A DNA stretch of 64,000 bases from Sminthopsis crassicaudata (lineage: Eukaryota): assembly GCF_048593235.1 (NCBI RefSeq), contig NC_133623.1, positions 17,910,211-17,974,210 of the forward strand. Direction: 5' to 3'. The notes under the pieces are model-generated. The model ran no database searches, was not told the DNA's origin, and saw only the letters and a program-made list of their open reading frames with translations. Positions 1 to 56,900 of the stretch are shown here, one piece after another. Every line of letters starts with the position of its first letter. Positions within the stretch are counted from its first letter, which is position 1. The position numbers and the translations under genes were made by a program.

Positions 1-379
1 CCTAGCTTAGCTGGAGGGAGTGGAACTCAGCTCCAGGAAGTCCCAGAGAAGCGGAACCTTTGAACTAGGGACCGCGGTTTCTGGCAGACACTTCCAGTTT
101 GAGCGCAGGGGCTTCTTACGTCACCTGCTGCAGACACCCACTCCCCACCCGGACACATAGGCTGAGCTTCCTGCAGTCTTCACTATTCTACGCCCTCGAA
201 GCACAGCAGTGCTAATCACCTCTGAGGCACTCCCAGGGAGAGGGTGGGGAACTCTCTCCCAGAGCTCTCTCTTAGCTCAGGCGCAGGAGCCGGTGCATCC
301 ATCCGGTCTGGGAGGAAGCTGGTAAAGAAGTAAATAATTTCCTACCCCAGAGACAGACCCCAAAAGATTTTTTTTAAGT
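1..379 (+). promoter_or_regulatory. L1 5' UTR / internal promoter region
   Basis: CpG-containing sequence richer in GC than the flanks, directly upstream of ORF1, with no ATG before position 380. Promoter role is inferred from L1 biology. Confidence 0.7.
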
Positions 380-1540
380 ATGAACAAAAAAGCTAGAAAA
401 ACCATAGATTCCTTCTATACAGAGAAAGAGCGGGTGTCCAACCCCGAGGAAGTTGACAGCAGAGAATCAGATAACAACCTAAAGGGGAACGATTCCTGCC
501 CCCCATCACATAACTCTCTCCTAGAAGAAGCTCTTAAGAAATTGAGGGAGATCGAAGAAAAATGGGGAAAGGAAAGAGAAGTTATGATAGAGAATAATAA
601 TGTCCTGAAATTGGAGTTGGAAAAAATAAAGAATTCACAGGAGATGCAGGGAAACAAAATTAGTGAATTAGAAAAGGTTAAAAAAACACAGGAAAGTAGG
701 ATTTCTGAATTGGAAAAGATAAAAAAGTCTCAAGAAAATAGAATTTCTGAATTGGAAAAAGAAAATAATTCTCAAAAAAAAAAAATTAGGGAAATGGAAA
801 AAAACTCAATAGAGCAAAATAATTCATTTAAAAACGAAATTGGGCATTTACAAAAAGAACTAAAAACTGTGAAAGAAGAAAATAACTCCTTAAAAGTCAG
901 GATGGAACAAATAGAAATGAATGATTCACAGAGAACCCAAGAATCAGTCAAACAAAACAAAAAAAATGAGAAGCTGGAGAACAACGTCAAATACTTACTG
1001 GGAAAATCTATAGACCTGGAAAATAGATCTAGGAGAGATAATCTGCGGATTATTGGACTTCCAGAAAACTATGACCAAAAAAAGAGCCTAGATTCTATTT
1101 TACAGGAAATTATCAAAGAGAACTGTCCAGAGATAATAGAAACAGAAGGGAAAGTAGATGTGGAAAGAATTAATCGAACTCCTTCTGAAATAGACCCTAA
1201 AAAAAGAACACCACGGAATATTGTGGCTAAGCTGCAGAATTACCACACAAAGGAGAAAATCCTGCAAGCAGCTAGAAAAAAACAATTTAAATACCAAGGT
1301 GCCACAATAAGGGTCACCCAAGATCTGGCTGCCTCCACATTAAAAGATAGAAGGGCCTGGAACCTGATATTCCGAAAGGCAAAAGATCAAGGACTGCAAC
1401 CAAGAATGAACTACCCAGCTAAGTTTAGCATCTTTTTCCATGGAAGAAGATGGTCATTCAATGAAACAGAGGAATTCTATATGTTTCTAAGAAAAAAACC
1501 AGACTTAAACAAAAAATTTGATCTACATCCACAAGACTGA
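380..1540 (+). CDS. L1 ORF1p (coiled coil + RRM + CTD RNA-binding chaperone), 386 aa
   Basis: Heptad-rich N-terminal half, then the canonical motifs DLENRSRRDNLRIIGLPE, TPRNIVAKL, and YPAKFS. Confidence 0.96.
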   Translation: MNKKARKTIDSFYTEKERVSNPEEVDSRESDNNLKGNDSCPPSHNSLLEEALKKLREIEEKWGKEREVMIENNNVLKLELEKIKNSQEMQGNKISELEKVKKTQESRISELEKIKKSQENRISELEKENNSQKKKIREMEKNSIEQNNSFKNEIGHLQKELKTVKEENNSLKVRMEQIEMNDSQRTQESVKQNKKNEKLENNVKYLLGKSIDLENRSRRDNLRIIGLPENYDQKKSLDSILQEIIKENCPEIIETEGKVDVERINRTPSEIDPKKRTPRNIVAKLQNYHTKEKILQAARKKQFKYQGATIRVTQDLAASTLKDRRAWNLIFRKAKDQGLQPRMNYPAKFSIFFHGRRWSFNETEEFYMFLRKKPDLNKKFDLHPQD

Positions 1541-2063
1541 AGAGAAACAGAAAAAGGTACACAGAACCCTTGAGAACTGTAACTTTGTTGTGGGTATATA
1601 AAAAATACTCAAGGATAATTTGATTTTACTGATATAAAAGAAAAAAAGGGGGGTGTGGTAAAGGGAAGGAGGTCGGTTCAGAAAAAGGGGAAGGAGTGAT
1701 AAAAAGAGGGAAACTACATCCCAGGAAGAGACATAGAAAATACACCATATCTGAGGGAACTTAGTGAGGGGGAGAATCATTGTGTGAATCTTACTCTCAT
1801 CAGAAGAGGCTCAAAGAGTAAATAATTAACATATTTGTTTTTCAGAGAATTTTCTCTCACCTCATTAAAAGGGGGGAGAGGAAAAGGGGAAAGGAAAAGG
1901 AGAATAAGTGAAGGGACTTGGAGGGAGGGGGGAGGGATCCTAAAAAAAAAAAAAAAAAAAAAAAGAGGGAGGGTTGCGCGTCACAAGGGGGGTCTGTAAA
2001 TTAAATATCGGGGAGGGGGATCAGGGGGGTCAAGGGAAAAAAGTATAATCTGGGGATAATACG
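1541..2063 (+). other. L1 inter-ORF spacer, 523 nt, purine-rich, with A23 tract (1942-1964) and G-tracts
   Basis: Lies between the ORF1 TGA (1538-1540) and the ORF2 ATG (2064). No ATG on the sense strand. Confidence 0.9.
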
Positions 2064-5000
2064 ATGGCAGGAAATACAGAATTAGTAATTTTAACTGTAA
2101 ATGTAAATGGGATGAACGATCCCATCAAACGGAGACGGATAGCAGATTGGATCAAAAAGCAGAACCCTACAATATGTTGTCTACAGGAAACACACTTAAA
2201 GCAGGGAGATACATACAGAGTAAAGGTAAAAGGTTGGAACAGAGCTTATTATGCTTCAGGTAAAGCCAAAAAAGCAGGGGTAGCTATCCTTATCTCAGAT
2301 CAAGCAAAAGCAGAAGTAGATCTCGTTAAAAAAGATAAGGAAGGAAACTATATCCTGCTGAAAGGTAGCATAAATAATGAAGCCATATCAATACTAAACA
2401 TATATGCACCAAGTGGTATAGCATCTAACTTTCTAAAGGAAAAGTTAAGAGAACTGCAAGAAGAAATAGACAGTAAAACTATAATAGTGGGAGATCTCAA
2501 CCTTGCACTCTCAGATTTAGACAAATCAAACCACAAAACAAACAAGAAAGAAATTAAAAAAGTAAATAGAACATTAGAAAAACTAGGTATGATAGACCTT
2601 TGGAGAAAACTGAATGGCAATAGGAAGGAATATACTTTCTTCTCAGCAGTTCATGGATCCTATACAAAAATTGACCATATATTAGGACATAAAGATCTCA
2701 AAATTAAATGTAGGAAGGCAGAAATAATAAATGCCTTCTTCTCAGATCACAATGCAATAAAAGCTACATTCAGTAAAAAGTTAGGGGTAAATAGACCAAA
2801 AAGTAATTGGAAACTGAATAATCTCATCTTAAAGAATGACTGGGTGAAAGAGCAAATTATAGAAACAATTAACAATTTCACCCAAGATAATGATAATGAT
2901 GAGACATCATATCAAAATCTTTGGGATGCAGCTAAAGCAGTAATAAGGGGAAATTTTATATCTTTAGAGGCTTATTTGAAGAAAATTGAGAAAGAGAAGA
3001 TTAATGAATTGGGCTTACAACTTAAAAGGCTAGAAAAAGACCAAATTATAAACCCCCAACCAAAAATTAAACTCGAAATACAAAAATTAAAAGGAGAAAT
3101 CAATAAAATTGAAAGTAAAAAAACTATTGAATTAATAAATAAAACCAAAAGTTGGTTTTATGAAAAAGCCAATAAAATAGATAAACCTTTGGTAAATTTG
3201 ATCAAAAAAAAGAAAGAGGAAAATCAAATTGATAGTCTTACAAATGAAAAGGGGGATCTTTCCACCAATGAAGAGGAAATTAGAGAAATAATAAGGAGTT
3301 ACTTTGCCCAACTTTATGCCAATAAATTTGATAACTTAAGTGAAATGGATGACTTTCTCCAAAAATATAGGCTCCCTAGATTAACAGAGGAGGAGATAAA
3401 TTGCTTAAATAGTCCCATTTCAGAAAAAGAAATAGAACAAGCTATTAATCAACTCCCCAGGAAAAAATCCCCAGGGCCAGATGGATTCACATGTGAATTC
3501 TACCAAACATTTAAAGAACAATTAGCCCCAATGTTATATAAATTATTTGAAAAAATAGGGGATGAAGGAGTCCTACCAAACTCCTTTTATGACACAGACA
3601 TGGTACTGATACCTAAACCTGGTAGATCGAAAACTGAGAAAGAAAATTATAGACCAATCTCCTTAATGAATATTGATGCTAAAATCTTAAATAAGATATT
3701 AGCAAAAAGACTTCAGAAAATCATCTCCAAGATAATACACTATGATCAAGTAGGATTTATTCCAGGAATGCAGGGCTGGTTTAATATTAGGAAAACTATT
3801 AATATAATTGACCATATTAATAATCAAATTAATAAGAACCATATGATCATCTCAATAGATGCAGAAAAAGCATTTGACAAAATCCAACATCCATTCCTAC
3901 TAAAAACTCTTGAGAGTATAGGAATAAATGGATTATTCCTTAGAATAATCAGGAGTATATATTTAAGACCGTCAGTAAGCATAATATGCAATAGAAATAA
4001 ACTGCAACCTTTCCCTGTAAGATCAGGAGTGAAACAAGGTTGCCCACTATCACCATTACTATTCAATATAGTACTAGAAACGCTAGCCTCGGCAATAAGA
4101 GCCGAGAAAGAGATTCAAGGAATTAGAGTAGGAAATGAGGAAATCAAACTATCACTTTTTGCAGATGACATGATGGTATACTTAGAGAACCCCAAAGACT
4201 CTGCTAAAAAGCTACTAGAAATAATTCAAAATTTCAGCAAAGTGGCAGGATACAAAATAAATCCACATAAATCCTCGGCATTTTTATATATCACTAACAA
4301 AATGCAACAGCAAGAGATACAAAGAGAAATTCCATTCCAAACAAATGTTGAGAGTATAAAATATTTGGGAATCCATCTACCAAAGAAAAGTCAGGAATTA
4401 TATGAGAAAAATTACAAAACACTTGCCACAAAAATAAAATCAGATTTAAATCATTGGAAAGACATTCAGTGCTCTTGGATAGGCCGAGCGAATATAATAA
4501 AGATGACAATACTCCCCAAACTAATCTATTTATTTAGTGCTATACCAATCAGACTCCCAAGAAACTATTTTAATGACCTAGAAAAAATAACAACAAAATT
4601 CATATGGAAGAATAAAAGGTCAAGAATTGCAAGGGAACTAATGAAAAAAAACTCAGAGGAAGGTGGTCTAAGTGTACCTGATCTAAAGCTATATTATATA
4701 GCAGCAGTCACCAAAACCATTTGGTATTGGCTACAAAATAGACCGGTAGATCAGTGGAACAGATTAGATACAAAGGACAAAAAAGGGTACATCTATAGCA
4801 ATCTAATCTTTGACAAACCCAAAGATTCCAACATTAGGGATAAAAATTCATTATTCGGAAAAAACTGTTGGGAAAACTGGAAATTAGTATGGCAGAAATT
4901 AGATATGGATCCACACTTAACACCATATACCAAGATAAGATCAAAATGGGTCCATGATTTAGGCATAAAGAGGGAGATAATAAATAGATTGGAGGAACAG

Positions 5001-5897
5001 AGGATAATCTACCTCTCAGACTTGTGGAGGAGGAAGGAATTTATGACCAGAGGAGAACTAGAGATCATTATTGATCACAAAATAGAAGATTTTGATTACA
5101 TCAAACTAAAAAGTTTCTGTACAAATAATACTAATGCAAACAAGATTAGAAGGGAAATAACAAATTGGGAAAATATTTTTAAAAACAAAGGTTCTGACAA
5201 AGGTCTCATTTCCAAAATATATAGAGAACTGACCCAAATTTATAAGAAACCGAACCATTCTCCAATTGATAAATGGTCAAAGGATATGAACAGACAATTC
5301 TCAGAGGAAGAAATTGAAACTATATCCACTCACATGAAAGAGTGTTCCAAATCACTACTGATCAGAGAAATGCAAATTAAGACCACTCTGAGATACCACT
5401 ACACACCTGTCAGATTGGCTAAGATGACAGGAACAAATAATGACAAATGTTGGAGGGGATGTGGGGAAACTGGGACACTAATACATTGCTGGTGGAGTTG
5501 TGAAAGAATCCAGCCATTCTGGAGAGCAATCTGGAATTATGCCCAAAAAGTTATCAAATTGTGCATACCCTTTGACCCAGCAGCGCTACTACTGGGATTA
5601 TATCCCAAAGAAATACTAAAGAGCGGAAAGAGACATATATGTGCCAAAATGTTTGTGGCAGCTCTTTTTGTTGTAGCTAGAAACTGGAGGATGAATGGAT
5701 GTCCATCAGTTGGAGAATGGTTGGGTAAATTGTGGTATATGAAGGTTATGGAATATTATTGCTCTGTAAGAAATGACCAGCAGGAGGAATACAGAGAGGG
5801 TTGGAGAGACTTAAATCAACTGATGCTGAGTGAAATGAGCAGAACCAGAAGATCACTGTACACTTCAACAACAATGCTGTATGAGGATGTATTCTGA
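2064..5897 (+). CDS. L1 ORF2p (APE endonuclease, reverse transcriptase, Cys-rich C-terminus), 1277 aa
   Basis: EN motifs NVNG, LQET, GDLN, SDH. RT motifs [32 protein letters not shown]-terminal [18 protein letters not shown] (CX3CX7HX4C). No stops or frameshifts. Confidence 0.98.
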
Positions 5898-6302
5898 TGG
5901 AAGTGGAAATCTTCAACATAAAGAAGATCCAACTCACTTCCAGTTGATCAATGATGGACAGAGGTAGCTGCACCCAGAGAAGAAACACTGGGAGGGGAAT
6001 GAAAATTGTTAGCACTAATATCTGTCTGCCCAGGTTGCATGTACCTTCGGATTCTAATGTTTATTGTGCAACAAGAAAGTGATATTCGCACACATGTATT
6101 GTACCTAGACTATATTGTAACACATGTAAAATGTATGGTATTGCCTGTCGTCGGGGGGAGGGAATAGAGGGAGGGGGGGTAAATTGGAAAAATGAATACA
6201 AGGGATAATATTATAAAATATATATATATATATATATATAATAAAAAATATAATAAAAAAAAATTAAAAAAAAAAAATAAAAGTAATAAAAAGTTATAAA
6301 AA
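5898..6302 (+). other. L1 3' UTR with G-rich polypurine tract and (TA)n / A-rich tail
   Basis: ggggggagggaatagagggagggggggt near 6153-6180, (TA)n at about 6218-6240, then interrupted A-runs. Confidence 0.88.
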
Positions 6303-8190
6303 CTCACTCAACAAAATAATTTCTTAAAAATTAAAATTGGGCAAGTGTTCACAACACAGCAAGAAACAACAAAACAAAGTCAGAAGACTGAAAAAAAAAG
6401 AGAAAACCGTGAAATATCTCATCAGAAAAATAACTGACAGATTAGAAAACAGACTGAGGAGAAAAAAATTGAAGAATTATTGAACTACCTGAATGTCATA
6501 ATAGGAAAGAATCTGAACATCATATTTCAAGAAATTATCAAGGAACACTTCTCTGATTGCCTAAGGGTGAAACAGAAATTGAAAAAGAAAAAAACAACAA
6601 CACTGAATACCTCCTGAAAGAAAACCCAAAATGAAAACTCCCAGGAATACTACAATTAAATCCCAGACCTTCCACATCAAGGAGAGCTTTTATAGTAGAG
6701 AAACATGGGAAGGAGAGAGACAAGATAACTTGAACCTCATTCTCATTGGAATTGATTCAAAGAGCAAAGAATAATACAAATATGCGCGCACACAGACACA
6801 CACACACACACACACACACACATTCACAGACTAAGTTGGGTATAGAAATGTATCTTATCCAAAAAGGATATTAGAAGAGAGGGGCAAAATAAACAGTAGG
6901 GGTAGGGAGAGATGATAAAATATAGGGGAGGAAGAAATCAGAAACAAAAACATACTTTTGAGTAAAGGCAGGAAAAAAGAAAGAGAAGGTTGGATGGAAG
7001 GAAATATAGTCATTATAATTGTGAATGTGAATGGGATGAGCTCACCTATAAAATACCAGCAACATGTTCTTTATAAACAACAAACATGAAAAAGAAAGAT
7101 ACACACAGAATTAAAATAAAGGGCTGGAGCAAAATTTATTATGCTTTAGGTAAAGTAAAAAACACAGGAGTAGCAATCATGATCTCTGACAAAGCAAAAA
7201 CAAAAATAGATCTAATTAAAAGGGATAATCAGGGAAACTATGTTTTACTAGGAAATTAAGACTATCAAAAAAATTTACAGCAAGTTTCTCTGATAAAGGC
7301 CTCCTTTCTCAAATATACAAATTCATCTTTTTAAAAAGGCACTTCTCAATTTATAAATCCTCAAAAAGACATGAACAGAAAGTTTTCAGAAGAAGAAATC
7401 AAAGTTATTTACAATTGTATAAAAAGGATCTAAATCAGTATTGATCAGAGAAATGCAAATGAAAATATCAGAAACAAATATTTAAGCAGATGAGAAAAAA
7501 TAGGTACACTAATAAACTGATGGTGGAGCTGTGAACTGGTTCAACCATTGAAAATAATATGGAACTATGTCCAAAGGACTATCAAACTGTACACACTTTC
7601 TACTACCAGATCTGTTAGCCAAAAGATCAAAGACAAAGGAAAAGAATCAATATGTAAAAATAATTTATGGCAGCTATTTTGGAGGCAAACAATGAGAAAG
7701 AAATTGAATGGAGGATCTTCATTTAGGGAATGGCTGAACAACGTGTAGCATGATTACGCTACAGAAAGTGCTTTCAGAAAAACAAAACCACGGCAAGACT
7801 ATACAAACTTAATCAAAATGAAGTGAAAACTGGGAGAGCATTGTGCACAGTAAAAGCAATGCTGTAATTATGAGCACTTGTGAAAGACTTGGCTACTTTG
7901 ATCAAAACTGTGATCCAAGACAATTCCAAATAATTCATGAGGGAGAAAAAAATGCTATCTACCTCCAAAAAGAGAAATGATAACCTCTGAGTACAAACTG
8001 AAGTATAAAATTTTCTCACTTTCTTTATACTTTTTGCTTTATGGCTAATACAGAAATACGTTTTGCATGATTTTCCATGTTTGATTAATATCATATCGCT
8101 TATTTTTCAATGGATAGGGGAGAGATGGGAAGGAGGAAGATTTGGAACTCAAAATTTTAAAAATAAAATAATGTTAAAAATAAATAATAA
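6303..8190 (+). mobile_element. Older degraded L1 (ORF1 3' half, spacer, start of ORF2, internal deletion, ORF2 3' end, 3' UTR), interrupted by the young L1
   Basis: Degenerate ORF1 (NVKYLIRK..DLENR, FQEIIKE, MKTPRN-like). EN start at about 7010 (VIIIVNVNGM-like). A jump near 7250 to SDKGL-region sequence, then a 3' UTR and A-rich end. Confidence 0.8.
6789..6822. repeat. (CA)n microsatellite within the old L1 spacer
   Basis: Direct reading. Confidence 0.9.
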
Positions 8191-53900: not shown

Positions 53901-56900
53901 GCTATCACCTGAGGGGAAAAAACGTCTGTCAATTAACACTGAGCCATGAGGTCAGTGCCTAAGGATTGAGATGTGATCATAGGAGGGGAAAAAAATGGTT
54001 CTAATCTAAGCTGGAGTTTAAACTCCCATATTTATGAACATCAAGTATAGATACTGCCAAGTAACACTGGGACTTTGCCAGCAACCCTGGGTCTGCTTGG
54101 AGCCGTTTCCCTTTTTTCTCTGACATCTCCAGAGAATACTATTCCAATAATAGGAAATTGTTCTATATCACATAGAATTGATATTTATTTCTCCAGAATC
54201 GCAACTCACTCAAAACACTAATTTTCATGTGAATTGGAAAAATGGGTTGGACAACGATGGTGACAATAGAGGGTGTAGGTAATGACTGAAGCACAGAGGA
54301 CCCAGAGATTAATTGACTAAAGTTAGAATTAGAAGGAGGGTTCTCTCTGTGTGATGGTTAAATTTAATTTTTCTCATGGGATGTCTTTCTGGTGATGGTA
54401 GTGGTGTTTGGGGTCACTAAGTATTAGGAACAGGTTGTTTCCACTGAAATTATAGTGAAGTTTTTGGTCCTTAGACAGTCAGACTTATTAACGTCAGAGA
54501 GCAGCTAGATAATATTGACATTCCCCAGTTCTGGATTACCTATTCCCACCCACATACTGGATATGACTGAAAGAACTAATTTGAAAAGCCACAAAGGTAA
54601 ATCAATCTCCATACTTTATAATCATGCCTCATGTGTTACTAGTAAGGCCCCAGAACTGTTCTCTGTCCTAATTAGCGTGCTCCCTGCTTTGAGTTCTGAG
54701 CCTAAAAGGGTCAAAAGCTTTATGTCTAACAACATTCCAAAAAGTTGCAACTAAGCCTTATTGATTTCATTTTGAAATACAAAACACACCCCCACACAAA
54801 CACACCCCCACACATTTTTTTAAGGAAAAACAACAAACTCTATCAAAGGAAAACAATAAAGAGAGGGCAAGGACTACTCAAAATTTATATCTTTCTATCC
54901 CAGCTCTTAACCAAAATGTCATTAATAGAGGAGGCACTAAATAAATGCCTGTTGGACTGGATTGGATTGAAAGAGGTAACAAACAACTGAATGGTTTGAA
55001 TACTAATAAGCAATAATCAACAGTGAACAAAAGGACCTGGCGACTTCTGTGAAGAGCCATGCTTTAGAAAGGCAAATATCCCTAAACATACCTGGCAAGA
55101 TAGATAACAGTCTCTCCCCCCATTCTACCTCATAATATGGACGTGCACATGGGATAGACCGTAAGGGTCAGAACTAGAACCCCTATGACTGTCCATTGAC
55201 AGACATCCATTTCCTGACTATGCAGGAGAATCAAAAGACTGGCTACTATTATGGTAAGGACACATGGGACACGGCGAAGAGGCTCGATCTGCTTGGCTTG
55301 AAAGGGAAAAAGAACTAAGATCCATGCTCAGAAGATACAGACACACAGATTCGGGATGGATACAAATAAAACTGTCTGAACATCTCAAGCTGCTCCCAAA
55401 GTCCTGCAAGTGTTCAAAGCAAGGATTGCAGAACCCCTTGGGCTGCAATAGTTTCTTGCTTAGATTCAGGTTGAAATATATGGTCTTTAAAGTCCCATCC
55501 AGTTCACAGATTTTGGGATCCAATAACATGAATTGGCCCTGTTGTTATAGTTCTTACCAAGAGATGACTAGCAGAAACACTTGCAAGAGGTCTAGAGTCT
55601 GAGAGCAAGATCAAAGAGATTCAAGACCTAGAGGTCAGTGGAAGACAACAACTTCATTAACTAATACATTCAAATAGGTTTTCCCGTGGCCCAAAACCAC
55701 CTCCACCCCCTGTATTTCATTAGGGCTCCCTTGATGACTGATATTAAAGCTTTGCCACTGTCATAATAATAGGGATTTTTAATACTGAAACCCCAACTAT
55801 GCCAAATGTCCAAAAGTGATTTAGGTCTGTCAGTAACTAAAGGGACTTCCTTTAGCCAGATATGGTAAGTAAAAGAGCTTATTTTTCAGGGGTAAAAAGA
55901 AAAAAAATTATTTCTCAAGGCAAGAGACTGTCTTTTACGGGCAGTACAAATCATTGAAACTTAAGCTTATCATATCTTTTGGCTTCTCAACAAGGTATCA
56001 ATGGTTATGTCCACATTTCACAAAAAAAAGAGATGTGTTTAATTGAAAGTTTCCCACCAAGGCTCTTCTCTCTGTAAGCTCATCAGATTGATGAGGGGGA
56101 AGGAATTAAACTCTCCTGTGATGATTCAAATCTTCTTTTATATTCCAATTGTTTTTTGGGGGGAAATAAACTAGAATAAAGCCAAATTACACATTTCTTT
56201 TTTTTTCTAAAAACAAAACAAAAACCCACCAAACAAACATTAAGCATGTCTTAGTCAGTGGTGTTTATTCTTTAATTGAGAAAATATCATTTTCCTACAA
56301 TGAGGTTCTTGATTGGAATTTAAGCAAATTGAGTTTTGGAGTCAGGAAATGTGCTAGCAGAGACTTAACAAAAGAAAGATTAATGTGTCTCCGAACTGCA
56401 TGTGTACAATGAATACCAAAATGAGAGATGCTGCCTGCCACCAAGTGAGCCGAGGAGACTGAGATATTAACATCTTCCAAGGAATTTGATTGTAAAATAA
56501 CTCTGGAGACCATCTAGTACAAAGTCCTGCTGGATAATACTTAGAAAATATTAGGCCTTCACTAAAGTTATGTTTATATTAATGTGTGGTTATTTTCCTG
56601 TTCTGTTATTATTTCCATATTCATTTATATACCTAAAATTTCATGTAAGGATAATTTCTTCCTTCAAGCCACTGAAAACAATAGACATTTTCTCTTCAAA
56701 TCACATCTAAGGGCAAATGTCAAAGTCTGAACCAGGAATCATTTCTGTTCAACATAAGCCTTTCTTTATTCTTTTATTTAAACAACATGGGTTAAATTCG
56801 TGTAGGTTAGGCTCCTGTTTATAACTGTTTGCTGCAGGCACACGATGATGGCTGGTTCCTTATTCAGGGTGACTGCCTTGTACCCTCTATCTCAATATGC

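What the first reader, a model, noticed from the sequence alone, without database searches (positions are those of the whole stretch)
1541..2063. 523-nt inter-ORF spacer completely devoid of AUG
Reading the spacer base by base, I find no ATG between the ORF1 stop and the ORF2 start. My hand count gives about 33 AT dinucleotides, none followed by G, in a G-rich sequence where roughly 8-9 would be expected. The ORF2 start has a strong Kozak context (acgATGG). The homologous decayed spacer of the dead L1 at about 6700-7010 does contain ATGs. Human L1 ORF2 is translated by termination-reinitiation over a short spacer. This pattern suggests selection for long-range scanning reinitiation (or a spliced/internal ORF2 message) in marsupial L1.
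Basis: partly seen in the sequence, partly recalled or inferred. Interest (0 to 1): 0.7.

Follow-up and report, generated by a model that had tools for sequence, protein, structure and literature searches.

The report
AUG-free spacer in dunnart L1
A coding-intact L1 retrotransposon of the fat-tailed dunnart has no AUG in the 523 bases between its two genes, which fits ribosomes scanning that gap to reach the second gene, but a sister L1 family in the same genome carries several AUGs there, so this is a family-specific refinement and not a marsupial rule.

Summary
Window 1541-2063 (523 nt, ORF1 stop to ORF2 start) holds 34 AT dinucleotides and no ATG. Dinucleotide shuffles expect 6.9 (P about 5e-5 to 5e-4), and shuffling within small blocks gives the same result. 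ATG is the most depleted of the 64 trinucleotides.

The element is a young L1 of Sminthopsis crassicaudata with both ORFs intact. A second copy (L001, about 97.7% identical, 16-bp TSD) also has no spacer ATG. Its complete 873-nt 5'UTR has one ATG against 8.1 expected. The 3'UTR and both ORFs sit at expectation.

The generalisation to marsupial L1 fails. A second recently active dunnart L1 family (four copies) carries 4-5 shared spacer ATGs, at compositional expectation. Each opens a mini-uORF of 1-20 codons. The long marsupial spacer itself is already published.

Best reading (about 0.45): in this family the spacer acts as a second AUG-free leader that 40S subunits scan, most simply after ORF1 termination. 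The rivals are chance, a monocistronic ORF2 mRNA and an IRES.

This scan had not noted the feature before. Interest is moderate.

The parts
1..379 (+). 3' part of the L1 5'UTR. The element is cut by the window edge. By comparison with L001:5128-5619, 492 nt are missing.
   Evidence: Window 1 aligns to L001:5620. The L001 5' end is defined by a 16-bp TSD. This part has 0 ATG against 1.45 expected.
380..1540 (+). ORF1, 386 aa, intact
   Evidence: ORF list. Pfam Transposase_22 and Tnp_22_dsRBD. 96% identical to a Sminthopsis crassicaudata protein. 17 ATG against 21 expected.
1541..2063 (+). Inter-ORF spacer (IGR), 523 nt, 70% purine, no ATG, stop codons in all three frames (11, 8 and 7)
   Evidence: Homologous to the spacers of other dunnart L1 families.
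1484..2063 (+). Full ATG-free run, from just after the last ORF1 ATG (1481-1483) to the ORF2 ATG
1942..1964 (+). A23 tract inside the spacer. L001 has 21 A. Other families have 3-5 A at this site.
   Evidence: TRF and alignments
2061..2067 (+). ORF2 start codon in a strong context (A at -3, G at +4). It is the first AUG after the ORF1 stop. An in-frame stop lies at 2046-2048.
   Evidence: The same context is kept in families A and C.
2064..5897 (+). ORF2, 1277 aa, intact, with endonuclease and reverse transcriptase domains
   Evidence: 80 ATG against 85 expected.
5898..6290 (+). 3'UTR with a G-rich tract and an A/AT-rich tail. It serves as an internal control.
   Evidence: Sequence. In 5898-6200 there are 10 ATG against 9.8-9.9 expected, z +0.1. 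The end of homology to L001 is near 6290.
6690..6993 (+). Decayed spacer of an older, rearranged L1 fragment (about 6300-7460), with 4 ATGs. The ORF2-start homologue is at 6994.

Best explanation
The stretch is the long inter-ORF spacer typical of marsupial L1, here in the youngest L1 family seen in the fat-tailed dunnart loci sampled here. In this family the spacer behaves as a second AUG-free leader. The strongly contexted ORF2 AUG is the first AUG that a 40S subunit meets after the ORF1 stop codon.

The most likely mechanism is that ORF2 is reached by linear 5'-to-3' scanning across the spacer. The simplest version has 40S subunits stay on the RNA after terminating ORF1 and reinitiate at ORF2. 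Loss of every spacer AUG prevents wasteful starts on the way.

The AUG-free state is a derived optimisation of this family and not a requirement. A sister family works, or worked, with 4-5 mini-uORFs in the same spacer.

Shown: the depletion, its family specificity and the matching 5'UTR. Inferred: selection, scanning and reinitiation.
For: The spacer has 0 ATG against 6.9 expected, and this is robust to block-wise shuffles. The 5' 320 nt alone has 0 against 4.9 expected (P about 0.0015), so the depletion starts at the ORF1 stop and not only near ORF2. The ATG desert (1484-2063) is co-extensive with the spacer, while the last 140 nt of ORF1 (1401-1540) hold five ATGs.

The second same-family copy, L001, has 0 ATG in 522 nt. 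The complete 5'UTR of that copy (873 nt), which must be scanned, has 1 ATG against 8.1 expected. That single ATG lies in the YY1-like box 13 nt from the 5' end.

ATG ranks first of 64 for depletion in both the 5'UTR and the spacer, which differ in base composition. The 3'UTR (10 against 9.9), ORF1 and ORF2 are at expectation, so there is no general ATG-avoiding mutation bias.

A strong Kozak context at the ORF2 AUG is conserved across families. Old dead copies regain ATGs: D has 12, F has 7 and the window's dead copy has 4. Scanning or reinitiation has been proposed for L1 in the literature; the objection raised for long spacers was spurious reinitiation (PMC5381506), and an AUG-free spacer removes that objection.
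Against: Family A (four copies, 93-95.5% pairwise, short terminal branches) has 4-5 shared spacer ATGs, at expectation in the 5' part (4-5 against 5.2-5.5). AUG avoidance is therefore not needed for a successful dunnart L1.

In a megabat L1, removing the spacer AUGs reduced retrotransposition 3.3-fold (PMC4072516).

Reinitiation after a 386-codon ORF and 523 nt of scanning is not an established mechanism. The spacer folds better than shuffles (z -3.7) and has 21 runs of three or more G, which could hinder scanning.

The shuffle null is over-confident, since z-scores have an sd of about 1.6. Only two copies of the young family were available. There is no RNA, ribosome or reporter evidence.
Confidence: 0.45

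Rival explanations
1. Chance or hitch-hiking. The master lineage of this family happens to have lost its few spacer ATGs with no effect on ORF2 translation.
For: Sister family A and the C-type copy carry spacer ATGs at or near expectation. Inter-family relationships are unresolved, so no directional purge can be shown. The trinucleotide z-scores are overdispersed, and other trinucleotides show gaps of 500-780 nt in the window. The last 200 nt are purine-rich and expect only about 2 ATG. AUG depletion in the 5'UTR is expected under any model, so it does not by itself prove spacer selection.
Against: Zero against about 7 expected. ATG is the single most depleted trinucleotide and the only absent one with an expectation above 2. 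The desert coincides exactly with the spacer. The element's 3'UTR shows no depletion.
Confidence: 0.27
2. ORF2 is made from a monocistronic RNA. This RNA would either be spliced from a 5'UTR donor to an acceptor inside the spacer, or started near the ORF1 end. The spacer, or its 3' part, would then be a cap-proximal leader that must be AUG-free.
For: The sequence has a donor-like site ctg|GTAAAG at 322. It also has an acceptor-like site with a pyrimidine tract and a ttaac branch-point-like motif, tttgtttttcag|AG, at 1844-1845. The C-type copy has a similar acceptor and family A has none.

Both the 5'UTR and the spacer are AUG-free, so a joined leader would be too. Unchecked notes from this scan report a TSD-flanked L1 with ORF2 but no ORF1, and a candidate spliced L1, in the same genome. 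Spliced and monocistronic ORF2 RNAs are described for human L1 (PMC12179785 abstract).
Against: The splice-site scores are only moderate (crude scoring). A splice into position 1845 would not explain the depletion in 1541-1844. No RNA data could be obtained. The earlier notes were not checked.
Confidence: 0.15
3. An IRES in the purine/A-rich 3' half of the spacer places ribosomes at or near the ORF2 AUG. The absence of AUG further upstream would then be irrelevant.
For: IRES predictors flagged long L1 spacers, including the opossum's, next to ORF2 (PMC5381506). IRESs upstream of both ORFs of mouse L1 were defined experimentally (PMC3592465 abstract). The spacer is 70% purine, has GA-rich repeats and an A23 tract, and folds better than shuffles. 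In the family-A copies A and H the last 200 nt have no ATG.
Against: No Rfam IRES family, cripavirus type included, matches even at E <= 10. The hairpin I tested is not supported by covariation. The conserved strong Kozak context points to AUG recognition by scanning. The depletion in the 5' 320 nt is unexplained under this model. Absence of ATG in the last 200 nt is near compositional expectation.
Confidence: 0.1

Closest known systems
Long inter-genic region (IGR) of marsupial, afrotherian, pig and megabat L1 (Yang et al. 2014, PMC4072516; Boissinot and Sookdeo 2016, PMC5381506)
   Same: A spacer of several hundred nt lies between ORF1 and ORF2. It is AT/A-rich with short imperfect repeats, as described for the opossum. 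The dunnart spacer is 523 nt.
   Different: Neither paper, in the passages my term searches returned, reports a naturally AUG-free IGR. The megabat IGR contains AUGs and small ORFs whose removal lowered activity. Here the youngest family has none.
Human L1 unconventional termination/reinitiation of ORF2 (Alisch et al. 2006, as summarised in PMC4072516 and PMC5381506)
   Same: The RNA is bicistronic, and ORF2 translation depends on ribosomes that have translated an upstream ORF.
   Different: The human spacer is short (given as ~40 bp in PMC5381506, and PMC4072516 gives a median of 63 bp across surveyed species), and the model calls for termination close to the ORF2 start. Here the nearest upstream stop of a translated ORF is 523 nt away, with no intervening small ORF.
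uAUG-depleted 5' leaders of cap-dependent mRNAs
   Same: The AUG depletion is selective for the sense strand upstream of a start codon in good context. The element's own 5'UTR shows the same signature (1 against 8.1).
   Different: This 'leader' lies downstream of a 386-codon ORF, inside the mRNA.
Dunnart L1 family A (copies in L002, L003, L004, L005)
   Same: It has a homologous spacer of 455-467 nt, the same ORF2 start context, and a YY1-like box at the 5' end.
   Different: It has 4-5 master-level spacer ATGs opening uORFs of 1, 5, 5, 8 and 20 codons, all ending at least 196 nt before ORF2. It also has 3 shared ATGs in its 626-nt 5'UTR.

Membership tests
LINE-1 (L1) retrotransposon | ORF1 protein with the L1 RRM-type and C-terminal domains | tested here: met
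   Pfam PF02994 (1.3e-14) and PF17490 (5.6e-07)
LINE-1 (L1) retrotransposon | ORF2 with an APE-type endonuclease and a reverse transcriptase | tested here: met
   Pfam PF03372 (4.6e-22) and PF00078 (4.9e-50)
LINE-1 (L1) retrotransposon | A-rich 3' tail and target-site duplication | tested here: met
   Sibling copy L001 has a 16-bp TSD at 5112 and 12901 flanking the element and its A-rich tail. The window copy's 5' end lies outside the window.
Long-IGR L1 (marsupial/afrotherian type) | ORF1-ORF2 spacer of several hundred bp | tested here: met
   523 nt. The published range for opossum, elephant, hyrax and pig is 423-719 bp (PMC5381506).
Termination-reinitiation of the calicivirus TURBS type | Stop and restart codons overlap or lie within a few nt of each other | tested here: not met
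   523 nt separate the ORF1 stop from the ORF2 AUG
Termination-reinitiation of the calicivirus TURBS type | An upstream motif that pairs with 18S rRNA | not tested
   No dunnart 18S sequence was at hand. G-rich motifs are too frequent here for a match to be meaningful.
Delayed reinitiation of the GCN4/ATF4 type | The upstream ORF is short (a few codons) | tested here: not met
   ORF1 is 386 codons. The family-A mini-uORFs (1-20 codons) would fit this feature, but the young family has none.
Dicistrovirus (cripavirus) IGR IRES | Match to the structured IRES covariance model | tested here: not met
   cmscan of 1300-2300 against Rfam 15 at E <= 10 found no IRES family
Mouse-L1-type A/purine-rich ORF2 IRES | A/purine-rich tract just upstream of ORF2 (a feature recalled from my own knowledge of Li et al. 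2006; that paper was not read here) | tested here: met
   The spacer is 40% A and 30% G, with GA-rich repeats and A23. This is a compositional resemblance only.
Mouse-L1-type A/purine-rich ORF2 IRES | Cap-independent second-cistron expression | not testable with these tools
   Needs reporter assays

The most novel reading that the evidence does not exclude
A mammalian retrotransposon family has evolved a 523-nt AUG-free inter-cistronic leader because post-termination 40S subunits scan that whole distance after translating a 386-codon ORF. That would be long-range reinitiation after a long ORF, a mode not established for cellular or L1 mRNAs. The two dunnart families, one AUG-free and one with a mini-uORF relay, would be two natural solutions to the same problem.
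Probability: 0.25. Interest if true: 0.7.

Novelty: new variant of a known kind. Interest (0 to 1): 0.42.

Why it matters
How L1 translates ORF2 from a bicistronic RNA is a long-standing open question. For L1s with long spacers, the literature dismissed reinitiation because of the risk of spurious starts. A natural, apparently coding-competent L1 has a spacer with no AUG at all. A sister family in the same genome has mini-uORFs in the homologous spacer. Together they give a ready-made pair for testing scanning and reinitiation against an IRES and against a separate ORF2 message.

Separately, a full-length L1 with both ORFs intact in the fat-tailed dunnart bears on the published suggestion that dasyuromorph genomes are depleted of functional L1 (PMC5010896).

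Tried and rejected
- **Other marsupials.** Wallaby loci returned no DNA. The devil protein was not on record. Opossum, devil and wombat proteins come from UniRef only and have no contigs. The supplement of PMC5381506 is not held.
- **Metagenome scan with the ORF2 endonuclease domain.** It gave only a 48%-identity L1 of an unknown mammal (L007) and a 26% hit (L008). I could not tell the host, so I left both alone and did not compare them.
- **L006.** This is a MAG contaminant contig that ends 25 nt after ORF1, so it has no spacer.
- **Compositional patchiness as the cause of ATG absence.** Rejected by block-wise shuffles and a local T-to-G expectation.
- **A conserved hairpin (pyrimidine run pairing with a purine run at about 1850-1890).** The alignment fold is weak, at -1.5 kcal/mol with broken pairs, and one row was mis-extracted. 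Dropped.
- **Copy E (L002, ORF2 start at 55121, minus strand) as a possible ORF1-less spliced copy.** It is simply 5'-truncated about 50 nt before ORF2.
- **Copy H (L005) as a half-L1.** It is interrupted about 95 nt into ORF2 by a tandem repeat.
- **Polarising ATG gains and losses on a tree.** Inter-family branching is unresolved.

Full report
**What is there**

Window 1-6290 is one L1 element on the + strand. ORF1 is at 380-1540 (386 aa) and ORF2 at 2064-5897 (1277 aa). These are the only ORFs of at least 100 aa in the first 9 kb. Pfam finds the L1 ORF1 domains in ORF1, and the endonuclease and reverse transcriptase in ORF2.

ORF1p is 96% identical to a protein annotated in Sminthopsis crassicaudata. 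The next best hits are Tasmanian devil proteins at 68%. The window is therefore from the fat-tailed dunnart.

The two ORFs are in different frames, and the spacer carries 26 stop codons spread over all three frames. A fusion by readthrough or frameshift is excluded.

**The observation**

The spacer 1541-2063 is 523 nt and 70% purine. It has 34 AT and 21 TG dinucleotides but no ATG.

| Test | Expected ATG | P(0) |
|---|---|---|
| 20,000 dinucleotide-preserving shuffles | 6.9 | 5e-5 |
| 2,000-shuffle rerun | 6.9 | 5e-4 |
| Shuffles within blocks of 25-150 nt | 6.1-6.9 | <= 4e-4 |
| Local T-to-G expectation | about 7 | not computed |

The spacer alternates A/T-rich and G-rich patches, which is why I ran the block-wise and local tests.

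ATG is the most depleted of the 64 trinucleotides, and the only absent one with an expectation above 2. Two caveats apply:
- z-scores over all trinucleotides have an sd of about 1.6, so the shuffle P is optimistic. A rank P of 1/64 is the safe figure.
- The ATG-free run 1484-2063 is the longest on this strand of the window. Trinucleotides of similar frequency have longest gaps of 350-780 nt somewhere in the window. What is notable is that the run coincides exactly with the spacer.

**Internal controls**

| Region | ATG observed | ATG expected |
|---|---|---|
| 3'UTR (5898-6200) | 10 | 9.9 |
| ORF1 | 17 | 21 |
| ORF2 | 80 | 85 |

The element has no general ATG-avoiding bias. The depletion already holds in the 5' 320 nt of the spacer (0 against 4.9 expected, P about 0.0015). 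In the last 200 nt the expectation is only about 2.

**Other copies**

*Same family.* L001 is about 97.7% identical to the window copy. It is flanked by a 16-bp target-site duplication, and an unrelated L1 fragment is inserted in its ORF2. Its 522-nt spacer has seven substitutions and two indels relative to the window, and also no ATG.

L001 also shows the true 5' end of the family, which lies outside the window. It has a YY1-like box (CCAAGATGGCGG) and an 873-nt 5'UTR. That 5'UTR has a single ATG, inside the box at nt 13, against 8.1 expected. ATG is again the most depleted trinucleotide there (z -3.2), in a region of quite different base composition.

In this family both non-coding stretches that precede an ORF are therefore almost AUG-free: 1 ATG in 1,395 nt against about 15 expected.

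*A second family.* Four independent copies (A, B, G and H, in L002, L003, L004 and L005) form a second family.
- They are 93-95.5% identical to each other.
- They are 85% identical to the window element in ORF2 and 74% in ORF1.
- Their terminal branches are short.
- Their ORF1 is intact, which is how they were found. Their ORF2 has a few breaks.

Their spacer (455-467 nt) is clearly homologous to the window's. It carries four ATGs shared by all copies that retain the site, plus a fifth shared by B, H and an old copy. The family's master therefore had 4-5 spacer AUGs. This is at compositional expectation for the 5' part (4-5 against 5.2-5.5).

Each of these ATGs opens a tiny ORF of 1, 5, 5, 8 or 20 codons, ending at least 196 nt before the ORF2 AUG. 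The family's 626-nt 5'UTR has three shared ATGs.

*Older copies.* An intermediate, decayed copy (C) has five ATGs, one or two of them at columns shared with other families. Old copies D and F have 12 and 7.

The tree does not resolve the order of the families, so I cannot say which ATGs were lost and which were gained.

**Literature**

The long spacer of marsupial L1 is known (PMC4072516, PMC5381506).
- PMC5381506 argues that reinitiation across a long spacer would be risky because of spurious starts, and it predicts IRESs.
- PMC4072516 shows that a megabat spacer contains AUGs and small ORFs, and that mutating them lowers retrotransposition 3.3-fold in human cells.
- In my term searches of these two papers (AUG, ATG, start codon, uORF) and in the titles and abstracts returned by the library searches I found no mention of a naturally AUG-free spacer.
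- This scan had not noted one before.

**Interpretation**

The young family's spacer looks like a scanned leader. It is AUG-free from the ORF1 stop onward and ends in a conserved strong start context. It is paired with an equally clean 5'UTR, while the 3'UTR is ordinary.

The simplest mechanism is that 40S subunits remain on the RNA after ORF1 termination, scan the spacer and start at the first AUG, which is ORF2. I give this family of explanations about 0.45.

It cannot be a rule for marsupial L1, because family A shows no avoidance at all. At most, the two families are two workable solutions: a clean leader and a relay of mini-uORFs as in the megabat.

The rivals are:
- **Chance (about 0.27).** The family-A counterexample and the overdispersed null keep this alive.
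- **A monocistronic ORF2 RNA (about 0.15).** Donor-like and acceptor-like sites exist at 322 and 1844-1845. Unchecked notes from this scan mention ORF1-less and spliced-looking L1 copies in this genome.
- **An IRES in the purine-rich 3' half (about 0.1).** No Rfam IRES model matches, and the one hairpin I tested lacks covariation support. However, the spacer folds better than shuffles (z -3.7).

**What was not done**

- No reads were laid on the sequence.
- No other marsupial genome could be reached.
- Metagenome contig L007, an L1 of an unknown mammal, was left unexamined.

**Verdict**

The finding is a family-specific variant of a known structure and is of moderate interest.

Noticed in passing
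window 380-5897; L001:5128-12900: A full-length L1 with both ORFs intact in Sminthopsis crassicaudata, plus a sibling about 97.7% identical with a perfect 16-bp TSD. A PCR survey had found only 2 of 100 intact ORF2 fragments in this species and suggested that dasyuromorph genomes are depleted of functional L1 (PMC5010896). This copy is a candidate remaining coding-competent element.
   Followed up: partly
L001:5128-5150; L002 about 7378-7400 (also L003, L004): Both dunnart L1 families begin with a YY1-like box (CCAAGATGGCGG) at the extreme 5' end, although their 5'UTRs are otherwise unalignable. From my own knowledge, the human L1 promoter has a similar box. Its ATG is the only one in the young family's 5'UTR.
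   Followed up: partly
window 1942-1964: An A23 tract inside the spacer is specific to the young family (21 A in L001, 3-5 A in other families). An internal poly(A) could bind PABP. It could also serve as an internal priming site that yields ORF2-less 'half-L1' copies, as an unchecked note from this scan (s1-153719) describes elsewhere in this genome.
   Followed up: no
L002:9165-9631, L003:9123-9577, L005:11123-11589: The family-A spacer carries a conserved start-stop (ATGTAA) and four further mini-uORFs of 5, 5, 8 and 20 codons. This resembles the small-ORF relay reported for the megabat L1 spacer.
   Followed up: partly
L004:11114-11337: The family-A copy G has a spacer cut to 224 nt by an internal deletion of about 240 nt.
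   Followed up: no
L001:8350-9274: A 925-bp fragment of the 3' end of another L1 (80% identical) is inserted in ORF2 of the young copy in L001.
   Followed up: no
L005:11685-11900: The family-A copy H stops about 95 nt into ORF2 and is followed by a tandem repeat of about 75 nt (unit containing ctcccacttcttgttctaac).
   Followed up: no
L006 (JAJPYO010000209.1, 2533 bp): A contig filed under a Bacteroidales metagenome-assembled genome encodes an L1 ORF1 protein 57% identical to the dunnart's. This is almost certainly host contamination in the bin.
   Followed up: no
window 1974-1985: The only CpG cluster of the spacer (ttgcgcgtcac) is intact in both young copies and decayed to TG/CA in older families. 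GCG and CGC are the most enriched trinucleotides in the spacer.
   Followed up: no
window 6750-6815: A (CA)n microsatellite sits inside the decayed spacer of the older L1 fragment.
   Followed up: no
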